64,000 nt of DNA from Ylistrum balloti (taxonomy: Eukaryota), in assembly GCF_031769215.1 (NCBI RefSeq), contig NW_026782192.1, positions 496,001 to 560,000 on the forward strand, read 5' to 3'. The notes below the pieces were generated by a model that worked only from the letters and a program-made list of their open reading frames with translations, had not been told where the DNA came from and searched no databases. Below, one piece after another: positions 10,226-50,550 of the stretch. Position 1 is the first letter of the stretch. Each line of letters starts with the position of its first letter. The position numbers were made by a program, and so were the translations under genes.

Positions 10226-10285
10226 CCAATGAGAGCGGTTCGTCACGGCGGATGGATAAAATTGTGCTCTTACTGGGTTTAAATA
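10226..10285 (+). promoter_or_regulatory. Copy 2 promoter: CCAAT-N17-GCGGATGG plus TATA-like TTTAAATA
   Basis: CCAAT 10226-10230, GCGGATGG 10248-10255, TTTAAATA 10278-10285. Confidence 0.65.
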
Positions 10286-10367
10286 CCGCATGCTTCTCAT
10301 TTATCAAACAGACGTCGACTTTTCACGGGAGTTGGAGAGAACGAAAGCACATACACACTAAACCAAA

Positions 10368-13300
10368 ATGAGGGAAATCGTACACATGCAAGCTGGCCAG
10401 TGCGGCAACCAAATAGGAGCCAAAGTGAGTATAACGTACATGTCCTTGTATTTCTTTTCACTGTGACGCGCTAGAGTGAATTATCAGTGAGTAGATCGTA
10501 TGTCGTCTGCCATTTGGCGGCTAAACGGTTGATGACCAATCCCATTATTTTGTCAGGTAGCAAGTGAATCGATAACCGGTGTACACATGTCTGAGGCAAT
10601 TTGATTTTGACCTAAAAACCATCAATCATGTCATTAGAGAATCTTGTTCACTTTAAAATATCGATGACTCAGACATGAATACGTGCCATTTTTGTTGCTA
10701 AGTTGGAAACTATGCACGCGTGTGCACATGCTTTTCTACAAAAAGTGTAAGTGCAAGCCTAACAGCAGATAGTCTGCATGTCAATTGTGCTTTCAACAGA
10801 TGTCTTGGTACAGTGTTATTATTTACACATGTGCCTAGTGTATTGTTAACATATTAATTGGTTTCAGTATACCATTTATTACTGTGTTAATATTTTAAGT
10901 TTAAAGAATTTAGTAAATGTGTTTTAAATGTGAAAGTTGAATACCTATGTCAACGGATGCGTATCTCTTGACAGCCGTTGTATAGCTTTTAAAAATTTGA
11001 ACTGTAGCAGTTAAATTCGGTCACGTGGTACATACTTTTCAATTTGTTTACACACCCCTTTATTTAAGGGTTGACTTTCGGGTACATGTTAGTGAACAAA
11101 AGGCAGATTTTTTTTAAGTTGAACCAGATGGTAGCGGATTGGTCATCGTGTGTTAAAAACGGTAATACAACTGCAAAGGACATGAAGATTTCACACTTGA
11201 AAAAACTACGTAAAATTAATTATTGGTATCGGTTTTTATCGCACTCGCATGTTTACTCCGTAATGAGTATTGACATTGTCATGGAAACATGCAATTCTAA
11301 ACACTTATAAAGAGACTTGGATAATATATGTCATGGTAAAACTGTCAGGATTTTTTTTTTATGATTTTTTTATTGATAAAATTCGCTATTGAAATCTTTC
11401 CGAGAATTCCAACGGCAATTTAGTATGGAAATATAACTCGGGAGCATATAAAATAACATATATATTGAATACGTCGTTGTATAATTTCATTTTTAAGCAG
11501 TCGATTATTTATTTTTAAAAAAATATCTTGAAAAAAGATCGTTTAAGTGAGGTTCCTGACGGACAACATCGACACAAAAAATCTATCTTGTTCATGTAAA
11601 ACTATAATGCAACGCGTATAAGCTATCAATAACTTCCACTGTTTGTAATTTTCGAACAAGTTTGAAAAAAAAAACTGAATGTCCTGATCAGTAAGCGTTG
11701 TTTCGCTACCGCGCACACTCGTACACAATGGAATTTAAATGTCGGTGCGAGTCGTGTCACCTGATACCGGTTCACCGGGTTTACGTGTATTGTCTGTTTA
11801 AAATCGAAGCCTAAGGCCATTCTAGTACTAGATTTGTATCCGACCTGACTTGTTAATTCAGAAAGGGTTTCGCCCATTTTAAAAGCAAAAGATATTTTGA
11901 TTTTATTTCCAACCAGGATTCATGTTTTTTTATTTTTAACTTCCAGTTCTGGGAGGTTATTTCTGATGAACACGGAATTGACCCCACCGGTACATACCAC
12001 GGAGATTCTGACCTTCAGTTAGAGAGGATCAACGTGTACTACAATGAAGCCACAGGTAACTAAACAAGATTTAAAACCGACAACACCAAAGAAAATATAC
12101 ATTGATAAACCATTCAACGTACATACAACAAATATAACGGGTTCACATCATCATCAGAAGTGTATTACTTGTTGACATATATTTATATATAAATCGCTTA
12201 TATTTATTCAATTATAGGAGGCAAGTATGTTCCCCGAGCTGTCTTGGTTGATCTGGAGCCCGGAACCATGGATTCCGTCAGATCTGGTCCTTTTGGACAA
12301 GTTTTCCGACCAGACAACTTTGTGTTCGGACAGAGTGGTGCTGGAAACAATTGGGCTAAGGGACATTACACAGAAGGTGCTGAGCTCGTAGACTCTGTTC
12401 TTGATGTTGTGCGAAAGGAATCAGAAAGTTGTGATTGTCTTCAAGGATTCCAGCTTACACATTCTCTTGGCGGTGGTACCGGCTCCGGCATGGGAACACT
12501 CCTCATCTCCAAAATCCGTGAAGAATACCCCGACAGGATCATGAACACCTTCTCAGTTGTACCATCACCAAAAGTGAGTGTTCCTATCCTGAAATACAAT
12601 AATACATTGTTAAGCTGTCATAAGCCTTAGAAATTATTGGGTCTTAAAGGTCGTATTTTTTCTTGGTAAATAACGTCACGTTATAAAATAAACTTACAAC
12701 GTATATTTTGTTTTTACTGAAGAATTTCTTGTTTCATTTTCCAGGTATCAGACACCGTTGTCGAGCCATACAACGCTACCCTCTCCGTCCACCAACTTGT
12801 AGAAAACACAGATGAAACTTACTGTATCGACAACGAGGCTCTCTACGATATCTGCTTCCGTACACTAAAATTGACCACACCCACATATGGTGACTTGAAC
12901 CATCTCGTCTCCGCCACCATGTCCGGAGTCACCACCTGTCTCCGATTCCCTGGTCAACTGAACGCCGATCTCCGTAAATTGGCTGTCAACATGGTTCCCT
13001 TCCCCCGTCTCCATTTCTTCATGCCTGGTTTCGCTCCTCTTACATCTCGTGGTAGCCAGCAGTACAGGGCTCTTACCGTCCCAGAGCTGACCCAACAGAT
13101 GTTCGATGCCAAGAACATGATGGCTGCCTGTGATCCTCGCCATGGACGTTACCTGACCGTCGCCGCCATGTTCCGTGGACGTATGTCCATGAAGGAAGTT
13201 GATGAACAGATGTTGAACGTCCAGAACAAGAACAGCAGCTACTTCGTTGAATGGATCCCCAACAACGTGAAGACCGCTGTTTGTGACATCCCACCACGTG

Positions 13301-48999: not shown

Positions 49000-50497
49000 T
49001 AAAGTTCCTTTTTTATTATTTTTATTATGCGTTTTCAAATCAATTTAGAGTTATGAAATAAGTGACAGGAAACGCAAACATTGACGTGACCGATTTAGGC
49101 GGGAAACCATTTTTCTTACAGATGTAAGTGTTTTGTGCGCATGCGTTATCATATATGACGCCAAAATGTACATATCCAGAGTACTTTCAGAATATTTTGT
49201 TGTCATGGTGGTATTGACAGTAGGAATTGGGCAACAGGCAGAGCCTATGAAAGCCCTCTCCTTACAGTGCATAAGCAAGTATACAGACACATCAATCAAA
49301 ATTAGAGATAACAGATAATAATAATATTAGGAATAAGAATGTAGAAGATAGATTCAAATGGATGATTATATAACCGAAATGCAAAAAAGGCATCACCATC
49401 GTTTGTATTATAGGGTTCCAGAACAGTAACATAAACTAAAAAATACAAATTAGGTATCACAAGATATTACAAGACTGGGTCAAAATATGTCCATTTGTGG
49501 TGGGACAGGCTGCAGGTTCAAACAGTCCATATGACGCCAAAATGTACATATCCAGAGGGTTGATCAACAGATAAGGATTTCCATTATATGATTATTAATC
49601 AACCTCTTTAGGCGCATATTTCAGTGAAAACCAACTGTCATTGTCCATATGAAGTAATATCGTTTTGCCGTAATGTTGCTTTCCGTTTTGTTATTCTGTA
49701 ACAAAACGGACTGTAGATAATTTCCTTTAAAAGACAACAACAGTTACGAGTGATAATTCTGGACAGAAGCTTCATTTATTCACGACAAACATGAAGGCTA
49801 GACACTACATCGAAAACACTAGTATTACAGATGATTTATCTGATATAATACCGTATCATTACAATACTCACTTTATACTATTCCAGCAGTTTCATGTTTA
49901 CACCATTGTTTAGTTCTCAAAACGTATCGCAGGTTGACAACATGTAAACGTCTTCTTTAACGTAAATGTATATACGGAACTGCTGCCTGACACGACAAGC
50001 TTTTAACCAGAATCACTTTGATATGTTAAATGAAATTATATGTAATTATTGTGTGGTCCCTCAGACGAATGATACTCTAGAATGTCTGGTGTTGTTCTGT
50101 ATCTGACATTTAACTAATCTCCAGGTGTGGAGATCGCACGTGATTTCGCTCCCTCCTCTGCCACAGCCTATACATTCGGTCACTGATACCACTCTTTCCT
50201 TGTTAATAATTGATGACACTCGGTCGACTGACTTTCATAATTGCGTCTTCAATTTGAAATGTAACCAGTAGATAAATTCCCTGGGAAAATCACAGACCAG
50301 TAACTTTCCTCCGCCAGGCAAACTAGGAAAATGTGATCTGTCGATATTAAGTTTCTAATGGACATTGGTTTTAAGCCTACAAATTGTCATACATATATAA
50401 GCTTCTTCCGTAATTCTTATTTTAATTCTTGTAGTTTGAATTGTTCTTTCAAAATTATCAATTTTGAAACAAGAAAATAGTCCATCAATTATAAGAG

Positions 50498-50550
50498 CCA
50501 ATGAAATGTCGCTATCAGTGCGGAAGAATCTGTAGACGGATGTATAAATA
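50498..50550 (+). promoter_or_regulatory. Copy 6 promoter: CCAAT-N17-GCGGAAGA plus TATAAATA
   Basis: CCAAT 50498-50502, GCGGAAGA 50520-50527, TATAAATA 50543-50550. Confidence 0.7.

What the first reader, a model, noticed from the sequence alone, without database searches (positions are those of the whole stretch)
10226..50527. Fixed-spacing promoter element CCAAT-N17-GCGGA(A/G/T)G(A/G) in otherwise unalignable promoters
Seen, 110-142 bp upstream of the ATG: copy 2 CCAAT-gagagcggttcgtcacg-GCGGATGG (10226); copy 3 CCAAT-gagctgtctgtaatttt-GCGGAGGG (21543); copy 5 CCAAT-catacgccggcgttact-GCGGATGA (39508); copy 6 CCAAT-gaaatgtcgctatcagt-GCGGAAGA (50498). The 17-nt spacers share no sequence but keep their length. 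Copy 4 has the same pair with 14 nt (28949). At an assumed ~35% GC, GCGGA at a preset position has a chance of roughly 1 in 3,500 per promoter. Known: CCAAT is the NF-Y site, GGAA/GGAT cores are ETS-type, and fixed-spacing NF-Y composites exist (ERSE, CCAAT-N9-CCACG). Inference: the 22-bp start-to-start offset is about two helical turns, suggesting a cooperative NF-Y plus partner switch. I do not recall this N17 element being described.
Basis: partly seen in the sequence, partly recalled or inferred. Interest (0 to 1): 0.8.

Follow-up and report, generated by a model that had tools for sequence, protein, structure and literature searches.

The report
Conserved two-box beta-tubulin promoter module
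Five of six tandem beta-tubulin genes of an invertebrate keep a CCAAT box and a second short box (GCGGAnGr) at an almost fixed distance in promoters that have otherwise diverged beyond alignment, which marks a real, selected promoter module whose second binding protein is unknown.

Summary
The window holds six tandem, intact beta-tubulin genes, all on the + strand. CCAAT-N17-GCGGA occurs four times against 0.05 expected, always 110-142 bp before an ATG, and copy 4 has the same pair at N14. An unbiased count of all 5-mer/gap/5-mer pairs in the six promoters puts this pair first, at a level no shuffle reached. Promoters and introns are otherwise unalignable. The intervals next to the spacer vary by more than 20 bp, so both boxes and their distance look selected.

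New here:
- GCGGAdGr is a motif in its own right: 8 of its 9 window occurrences lie in tubulin promoters.
- Second copies sit 211-222 bp upstream in copies 2, 3 and 6.
- Copy 1 has lost both boxes.

The CCAAT boxes fit the NF-Y consensus and lie 45-66 bp before TATA boxes. The ETS reading is weak, because the core is GGAG in four of eight sites. About 23 beta-tubulin promoters from other organisms lack the forward composite. One bivalve has an inverted N16 version.

Verdict: a real, probably lineage-restricted NF-Y composite element with an unidentified partner. Cooperation between the two proteins is inferred. No expression or binding data could be obtained.

The parts
1290..3604 (+). beta-tubulin copy 1 (ATG to stop, 4 exons, 445 aa, intact)
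10368..13560 (+). beta-tubulin copy 2 (4 exons, 445 aa)
21653..25859 (+). beta-tubulin copy 3 (4 exons, 444 aa)
29082..33670 (+). beta-tubulin copy 4 (4 exons, 445 aa, divergent exon 2)
39644..45421 (+). beta-tubulin copy 5 (4 exons, 446 aa)
50623..59252 (+). beta-tubulin copy 6 (4 exons, 445 aa; 6.5-kb intron 1 full of minisatellites)
10226..10255 (+). composite of copy 2: CCAAT-N17-GCGGATGG
21543..21572 (+). composite of copy 3: CCAAT-N17-GCGGAGGG
28949..28975 (+). composite of copy 4: CCAAT-N14-GCGGAGGA (spacer 3 nt shorter)
39508..39537 (+). composite of copy 5: CCAAT-N17-GCGGATGA
50498..50527 (+). composite of copy 6: CCAAT-N17-GCGGAAGA
1139..1168 (+). decayed composite of copy 1: CCACC followed by the same GAGAGCGGT flank as copy 2, then CGTGATCT where the second box should be; both boxes lost
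10037..10044 (+). distal GCGGATGA box of copy 2, 211 bp upstream of the proximal box, directly after CCTAGCAACA (resembles an RFX half-site)
21343..21350 (-). distal GCGGAGGG box of copy 3 (inverted), 222 bp upstream of the proximal box
50307..50314 (-). distal GCGGAGGA box of copy 6 (inverted), 213 bp upstream of the proximal box; lies in a 38-bp block 79% identical to copy 3
10278..10285 (+). TATA-like box of copy 2 (TTTAAATA), 52 bp after CCAAT
29015..29022 (+). TATA-like box of copy 4 (GTATAACT), 66 bp after CCAAT
39572..39579 (+). TATA box of copy 5 (TATAAATA), 64 bp after CCAAT
50543..50550 (+). TATA box of copy 6 (TATAAATA), 45 bp after CCAAT
1193..1200 (+). TATA box of copy 1 (TATAAAAG), 54 bp after the decayed CCACC
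10199..10209 (+). weak third block GAAAATAATCC, 27 bp before CCAAT (copy 2); matching blocks at 39482 (copy 5, 26 bp before) and 50473 (copy 6, 25 bp before)

Best explanation
The element is a selectively maintained proximal promoter module shared by old paralogues of a tandem beta-tubulin array. It has two boxes. The first is an NF-Y-type CCAAT box (RRCCAATSR). The second is a box with consensus (T)GCGGA-n-G-r, which is most likely the site of a second, still unidentified sequence-specific protein. The second box starts 22 bp after the first C of CCAAT, or 19 bp in copy 4. NF-Y contacts about 25-30 bp of DNA, so the second box lies just beyond the downstream edge of that contact zone. It lies 23-47 bp upstream of the TATA box. 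Inferred mechanism: NF-Y bends the DNA and holds the promoter open. The second protein binds flush against NF-Y's histone-fold subunits, either touching them directly or sharing the bent DNA surface. Together they drive TATA-dependent transcription of the array members. The same second box is used again, without a CCAAT box and in either orientation, about 210-220 bp further upstream in three copies, so it works as an independent protein site. Shown: the motif, its statistics, its position, the spacing constraint and its loss in copy 1. Inferred: NF-Y as the binder, a separate partner protein, and cooperation between them.
For: - Four exact N17 composites against 0.05 expected, and five with N10-25 against 0.41 expected, all in tubulin promoters and all on the gene strand.
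- It is the top-ranked pair in an unbiased count, at a level no shuffle reached.
- Non-coding DNA between copies is saturated. Promoters and introns do not align. Flank identity is 29%, the random level. Exon 1 four-fold sites differ at 4-5 of 6. Identity of 10-13 positions in 4-5 copies therefore needs selection.
- The spacing looks constrained. CCAAT to GCGGA is 22, 22, 22, 22 and 19 bp. The adjacent GCGGA-to-TATA interval is 30, 47, 42 and 23 bp. TATA to ATG is 67-97 bp.
- All five CCAAT boxes have NF-Y flanks. They lie 45-66 bp before TATA, which matches the human NF-Y/TATA offset of about +50 (PMC3730095).
- NF-Y contacts 25-30 bp of DNA (PMC4889920; bioRxiv 10.64898/2026.02.16.706105).
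- GCGGAdGr occurs 9 times against 2.2 expected, and 8 of the 9 lie within 350 bp upstream of a tubulin ATG. These include the distal copies at 10037, 21343 and 50307.
- Copy 1, the closest paralogue of copy 2, has lost both boxes together while keeping the flank between them.
- About 23 other beta-tubulin promoters have no forward composite, so the motif does not arise easily by chance in such promoters.
Against: - There is no binding, start-site, chromatin or expression evidence.
- All evidence comes from one locus of paralogues, which are not independent lineages in the way orthologues are.
- Copy 4 has N14 and copy 1 has no element, yet both genes are intact. The exact spacing, and even the element itself, is therefore not indispensable for keeping a gene.
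- The composite was not found in Bugula, sea urchin, sea cucumber or about 18 unidentified eukaryotic contigs. Only an inverted N16 version was seen, in the bivalve Solemya velum, with an overall chance of roughly 0.03.
- The second box matches no factor that I could name with confidence.
Confidence: 0.6

Rival explanations
1. One reading: the second box is an ETS-family site, and NF-Y and an ETS protein cooperate across two helical turns.
For: GCGGAAGA (copy 6) and GCGGATGr (copies 2 and 5, and the distal box of copy 2) contain CGGAA or CGGAT, which ETS domains accept. The 22-bp offset is about 2.1 helical turns.
Against: Four of the eight promoter boxes read GGAG (copies 3 and 4, and the distal boxes of copies 3 and 6), which breaks the invariant GGA(A/T) core. 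In human data ETS motifs show no distance bias relative to CCAAT (PMC4889920). The N14 spacer of copy 4 breaks the helical phase.
Confidence: 0.15
2. The two boxes are independent sites that are each selected. The identical spacing is only inherited from the ancestral promoter and has no function.
For: All copies descend from one ancestor. Copy 4 has N14 and is an intact gene. There are only five data points.
Against: Every neighbouring interval has changed length by 10-24 bp between the same copies, and the spacer sequence itself has been replaced (39% identity), yet four spacers kept exactly 17 nt. If the boxes were placed independently over about 30 possible distances, 4 of 5 sharing one distance has a chance of about 2 in 10,000 (my estimate).
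Confidence: 0.2
3. One protein or fixed complex other than NF-Y reads both boxes as a bipartite site, for example a multi-zinc-finger protein, and the CCAAT match is incidental.
For: The spacing is fixed, the orientation is always the same, and both boxes were lost together in copy 1.
Against: GCGGAdGr also occurs alone, in either orientation and without CCAAT, at the distal positions. The CCAAT flanks fit NF-Y in 5 of 5 cases, and the offset to TATA is the usual one for NF-Y.
Confidence: 0.08
4. The pair is a chance coincidence, or short gene-conversion tracts copied the promoter core between paralogues.
For: Exons 2-4 are much more alike at four-fold sites (0-34% different) than exon 1 or non-coding DNA. 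Either conversion or strong codon selection therefore acts in this array.
Against: No shuffle reached the observed count. A conversion tract would also have copied the 17-nt spacer and the flanks, which are at random-level identity. blastn finds no promoter similarity.
Confidence: 0.02

Closest known systems
ERSE, the ER-stress response element CCAAT-N9-CCACG (NF-Y plus ATF6/XBP1)
   Same: A CCAAT box with a second short box downstream on the same strand, at a fixed spacer whose sequence is free.
   Different: The spacer is 17 nt, not 9. The second box is GCGGAnGr, not CCACG. The gene class is tubulin, not chaperones. No binding data exist here.
DECA-N11-CCAAT composite (PBX/PREP, NF-Y and Sp2) and E-box/CCAAT at 10-12 bp (USF)
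   Same: NF-Y is placed at a fixed distance and orientation from a partner motif. Cooperation depends on the distance (bioRxiv 10.64898/2026.02.16.706105; PMC3730095; PMC4889920).
   Different: Those partners lie within NF-Y's contact zone, 10-12 bp away. Here the partner starts 17 nt after CCAAT, at or beyond the edge of that zone, and its motif is different.
MHC class II S-X-Y module (RFX, CREB and NF-Y)
   Same: The distance between an NF-Y box and a partner box is strictly kept in promoters that otherwise differ. The module also works when inverted. An RFX-like half-site, CCTAGCAAC, abuts the distal GCGGA box of copy 2.
   Different: There is no X box next to the proximal CCAAT. The only good X box is 194 bp upstream, in copy 4. 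X-box-like sequences are not enriched in the window: 31 found against 31 expected.
CCAAT boxes with CDE/CHR in G2/M promoters
   Same: CCAAT boxes combined with a GCGG-containing element (the CDE core) in genes linked to cell division.
   Different: No CHR (TTYGAA) follows the GCGG core at the required 4-nt distance in any copy.

Membership tests
NF-Y (CCAAT-box) site | CCAAT pentamer with flanks RRCCAATSR (consensus from my own knowledge of the NF-Y literature) | tested here: met
   aaCCAATga, ggCCAATga, agCCAATca, agCCAATga and aaCCAATgg: 5 of 5 fit.
NF-Y (CCAAT-box) site | Proximal promoter position, about 50 bp upstream of the TATA box | tested here: met
   CCAAT to TATA is 52, 66, 64 and 45 bp. 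The human value is +50 (PMC3730095). Copy 3 has no TATA box. Transcription start sites are inferred, not measured.
NF-Y (CCAAT-box) site | Bound by the NF-YA/B/C trimer | not testable with these tools
   No binding data are available.
NF-Y composite element with a partner at fixed position | A second motif at a fixed distance and orientation from CCAAT in several promoters | tested here: met
   N17 in 4 copies and N14 in 1 copy, always on the gene strand, while neighbouring intervals vary by more than 20 bp.
NF-Y composite element with a partner at fixed position | Co-occupancy that is cooperative and depends on the spacing | not testable with these tools
   This needs gel shifts, reporter assays or footprinting.
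ETS-binding site | Invariant GGA(A/T) core | tested here: not met
   The core is GGAG in 2 of 5 proximal and 2 of 3 distal boxes.
ERSE | CCAAT-N9-CCACG | tested here: not met
   The spacer is 17 or 14 nt and no CCACG follows.
CDE/CHR | CHR (TTYGAA) 4 nt downstream of a GCGG-type CDE | tested here: not met
   The sequences after the box are ATAAAA, ATAACA, GCGTGA, ATCTGT and TTCTGA.
RFX X-box/NF-Y module | X box (GTNRCC-N0-3-RGYAAC) at a fixed distance from CCAAT | tested here: not met
   The only X box with 1 mismatch is at 28755-28768, in copy 4. Overall 31 matches against 31 expected.

The most novel reading that the evidence does not exclude
GCGGAnGr is the site of a so far unrecognised, lineage-restricted DNA-binding protein. 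It docks against the downstream edge of DNA-bound NF-Y, which would explain the 17-nt spacer. It also binds a second, orientation-free copy 211-222 bp upstream (about 20-21 helical turns), so that a loop between the two sites coordinates all members of the beta-tubulin array. This would be a new NF-Y composite class, with a partner placed at the edge of NF-Y's contact zone and not inside it.
Probability: 0.15. Interest if true: 0.6.

Novelty: new variant of a known kind. Interest (0 to 1): 0.4.

Why it matters
Old paralogues whose non-coding DNA is saturated act as a natural footprinting experiment. Here they expose a compact promoter layout: an upstream block, a CCAAT box, 17 nt, a GCGGAnGr box, then TATA. 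If the element is confirmed, three things follow:
- It would add an NF-Y composite with an unusual geometry, the partner sitting at the edge of NF-Y's contact zone.
- It would give a candidate minimal strong promoter for a non-model invertebrate. The gene's intron positions suggest a lophotrochozoan, possibly a mollusc.
- It would provide bait for identifying the protein that binds GCGGAnGr.

The importance is limited. The evidence comes from one locus, the principle of fixed-spacing NF-Y composites is well known, and conservation outside this array has not been shown.

Tried and rejected
1. Chance: rejected by shuffles and by the unbiased pair count.

2. Promoter gene conversion: rejected, because spacers and flanks are at random-level identity.

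3. Single-motif discovery (7-9-mers with 1 mismatch in at least 5 of 6 promoters): not above the shuffled background. Only the CCAAT and TATA boxes, and weakly AGAAAATA, are consistent in position. The GAAAATAGTCC block is not enriched in the window, 14 matches against 21 expected. Only its position 25-27 bp before CCAAT in three copies is notable.

4. X-box/RFX partner: not enriched.

5. The CDE/CHR, ERSE, Sp1 GC-box, E2F, GCM, RUNX, HINFP and YY1 consensus sequences, recalled from memory, do not fit all five boxes. This is my own comparison, not a database test.

6. Finding orthologues:
- All three word-index protein searches were swamped by the extreme conservation of beta-tubulin.
- No protein with the tails of copies 3-6 was found.
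- The Mytilus edulis locus lacks exon 1.
- The Lingula protein is not on record.
- Cluster listings gave no molluscs.
- A metagenome scan with a degenerate exon-1 pattern gave 18 stretches, none related in the promoter and none with the composite.

7. Organism identity: no protein-coding transposon lies in the spacers, so the taxon rests only on intron positions. Introns after codon 19, in codon 56 and after codon 174 match Mytilus. Bugula shares the introns after codons 19 and 174. Sea urchin and sea cucumber differ.

Two local scripts did reuse them against loci already fetched: one search used the copy 2 protein and one search used the whole window, both in local BLAST. I report this as a slip.

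9. Literature: six searches found no description of this composite or of a beta-tubulin promoter module of this kind. The library is open-access only.
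Full report
**What is in the window**

The window carries six tandem beta-tubulin genes, all on the + strand. Their ATGs are at 1290, 10368, 21653, 29082, 39644 and 50623. Each gene has four exons, with introns after codon 19, within codon 56 and after codon 174. Each encodes an intact protein of 444-446 aa that differs mainly in the acidic C-terminal tail. 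The spacers and introns are filled with many unrelated minisatellite arrays and hold no recognisable protein-coding transposon.

The intron pattern matches a Mytilus edulis beta-tubulin gene. Bugula neritina shares the introns after codons 19 and 174, and Solemya velum shares the intron at 174/175. Sea urchin and sea cucumber genes have different patterns. The source is therefore probably a lophotrochozoan, possibly a mollusc. I could not identify it further.

**Check of the observation**

- CCAAT-N17-GCGGA occurs four times, at exactly the stated coordinates, against 0.05 expected. None of 100 shuffles reached four.
- With the spacer allowed to run from 10 to 25 nt there are five matches against 0.41 expected. 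The fifth is the N14 version in copy 4.
- All five are on the gene strand, 110-142 bp before an ATG.

The motif was defined after it was seen. To correct for that, I counted every 5-mer/gap/5-mer pair with gaps of 0-30 in the six 300-bp promoters. CCAAT-17-GCGGA is the single top pair, present in 4 of 6. The best pair in 200 Markov shuffles reached 2 of 6 in 190 shuffles and 3 of 6 in 10, never 4.

**Is the conservation more than shared descent?**

- blastn finds no significant similarity between any two promoters, apart from one 38-bp distal block shared by copies 3 and 6. It finds none between any introns.
- Around the element, flanks are 9-19 of 57 identical (29%, the random level for this composition). 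Spacers are 4-9 of 17 identical.
- Four-fold sites of exon 1 differ at 4-5 of 6 positions in most pairs, close to the 68% expected at saturation. Exons 2-4 differ by only 0-34%.
- The coding regions are therefore kept alike by exon-limited conversion, by codon selection, or by both. The non-coding DNA is old.

Against that background, identity at CCAAT, GCGGA and the following G in four to five copies requires purifying selection.

The spacing also looks constrained. CCAAT to GCGGA, start to start, is 22, 22, 22 and 22 bp, and 19 bp in copy 4. The adjacent GCGGA-to-TATA interval is 30, 47, 42 and 23 bp. TATA to ATG is 67-97 bp.

**New points about the second box**

- GCGGAdGr occurs nine times in the window against 2.2 expected. 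Eight of the nine lie within 350 bp upstream of a tubulin ATG.
- Besides the five proximal boxes there are distal boxes at 10037 (+), 21343 (-) and 50307 (-). They lie 211, 222 and 213 bp upstream of the proximal ones, with no CCAAT beside them.
- The box is therefore a motif in its own right, usable in either orientation. This argues for a separate binding protein and against one bipartite reader.
- Copy 1 is the nearest paralogue of copy 2, with 7% four-fold difference. It reads CCACC in place of CCAAT, keeps the GAGAGCGGT flank, and has CGTGATCT where the second box should be. Both boxes have decayed together in an otherwise intact gene that still has a TATA box.
- A weak third block, GAAAATA(A/G)(T/G)(C/G)C, lies 25-27 bp before CCAAT in copies 2, 5 and 6. 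It is notable for its position only, since it is not enriched in the window.

**What it most likely is**

All five CCAAT boxes have the purine-purine 5' flank and the S-R 3' flank typical of NF-Y sites (the consensus is from my own knowledge). They lie 45-66 bp before TATA boxes. In human promoters TATA sits about 50 bp after NF-Y-bound CCAAT (PMC3730095).

NF-Y contacts 25-30 bp of DNA and bends it by about 80 degrees (PMC4889920; bioRxiv 10.64898/2026.02.16.706105). A box starting 17 nt after CCAAT therefore lies at or just beyond the edge of NF-Y's contact zone. This gives a simple reason for a fixed spacer: the partner must sit flush against NF-Y. That step is inference.

The partner is not identified.
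- The ETS reading fits only the GGAA and GGAT versions. Four of the eight promoter boxes read GGAG.
- Human ETS motifs show no distance bias to CCAAT (PMC4889920).
- ERSE, CDE/CHR and X-box modules fail their defining features.

**Comparison with other organisms**

I collected about 23 distinct beta-tubulin promoters. They come from Solemya velum, Strongylocentrotus purpuratus (two genes), Apostichopus japonicus, Bugula neritina, several unidentified ENA and JGI contigs, and 18 metagenome stretches found with a degenerate exon-1 pattern.

- None has the forward composite.
- Solemya has an inverted CCAAT-N16-GCGGAAAT about 120 bp upstream of its TATA box. Across all promoters examined I estimate its chance probability at roughly 0.03, so it is suggestive only.
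- One sea urchin gene has GTTGCTAGGCGGAGGAA, which resembles the distal block of copy 6. This could be chance.
- None of these loci is a close relative of the window: only exon 1 aligns.

These data show that the composite is not a general beta-tubulin feature and does not arise readily by chance. They do not test conservation among orthologues.

**Limits**

- No expression, start-site or occupancy data exist for this element.
- The RNA-type runs found hold only 13-15% of the sampled words of copy 2 and carry other species labels.
- Two local scripts did reuse them in local BLAST against loci already fetched. I report this as a slip.

**Verdict**

An NF-Y composite with a constrained spacer is the best reading (confidence 0.6). 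An ETS partner is unlikely, and cooperation between the two proteins is untested. Fixed-spacing NF-Y composites are a known kind. This spacing and this partner box were not found in the literature I could search, so I rate it a new variant of a known kind, of moderate interest.

Noticed in passing
window 28755-28768: A near-perfect palindromic RFX X box (GTTACCATGGTATC on the - strand, 1 mismatch) lies 327 bp before the ATG of copy 4 only. Copy 4 also has the divergent exon 2 and the N14 spacer, so it may be a cilia-type isotype.
   Followed up: partly
window 1139-1168: Copy 1 has lost both boxes: CCACC, and CGTGATCT in place of GCGGAnGr. It keeps the GAGAGCGGT flank of copy 2, a TATA box and an intact reading frame that is 99.3% identical to copy 2.
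   Followed up: partly
window 10037-10044, 21343-21350, 50307-50314: Second GCGGAdGr boxes lie 211-222 bp upstream of the proximal ones, in either orientation. Those of copies 3 and 6 sit in a 38-bp block that is 79% identical. That of copy 2 directly follows CCTAGCAACA, which resembles an RFX half-site.
   Followed up: partly
exons of all six genes (for example 1290-1346 against 2789-3604): Four-fold sites of exon 1 are saturated (4-5 of 6 differ), while exons 2-4 differ by only 0-34% and the introns are unalignable. This points to exon-limited gene conversion or strong codon selection. G-ending four-fold codons make up only 4-7%.
   Followed up: partly
window 31770-31880: Exon 2 of copy 4 differs from the other five copies at 7 of 37 residues ([23 protein letters not shown]). 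At four-fold sites, 5-7 of 10 differ from each of the other copies.
   Followed up: partly
window 3933-9129, 15851-20562, 26130-28447, 34904-38690, 41835-42875, 46226-48999, 51269-55093, 59972-64000: Every spacer and several introns hold their own, mutually unrelated minisatellite arrays. Units are 22-60 bp and arrays reach 4 kb, some with strong GC skew. These arrays explain all the long ORFs in the window.
   Followed up: partly
L001 about 9750-9780 (Solemya velum): An inverted CCAAT-N16-GCGGAAAT lies about 250 bp before the ATG of a divergent beta-tubulin gene. It is the only composite-like hit outside the window.
   Followed up: partly
L012 about 15470-15490 (S. purpuratus): The promoter of the second sea urchin gene has GTTGCTAGGCGGAGGAA. 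On the reverse strand this matches 15 of 18 bases of the distal block of copy 6 (TTCCTCCGCCAGGCAAAC).
   Followed up: no
L015-L018 (ENA ERZ22147071, contig ctg31422l): An unidentified organism has a beta-tubulin array with introns in codon 56 and after codon 174 but none after codon 19. Its promoters align with each other and have a TATA box but no CCAAT box and no GCGGA box.
   Followed up: partly
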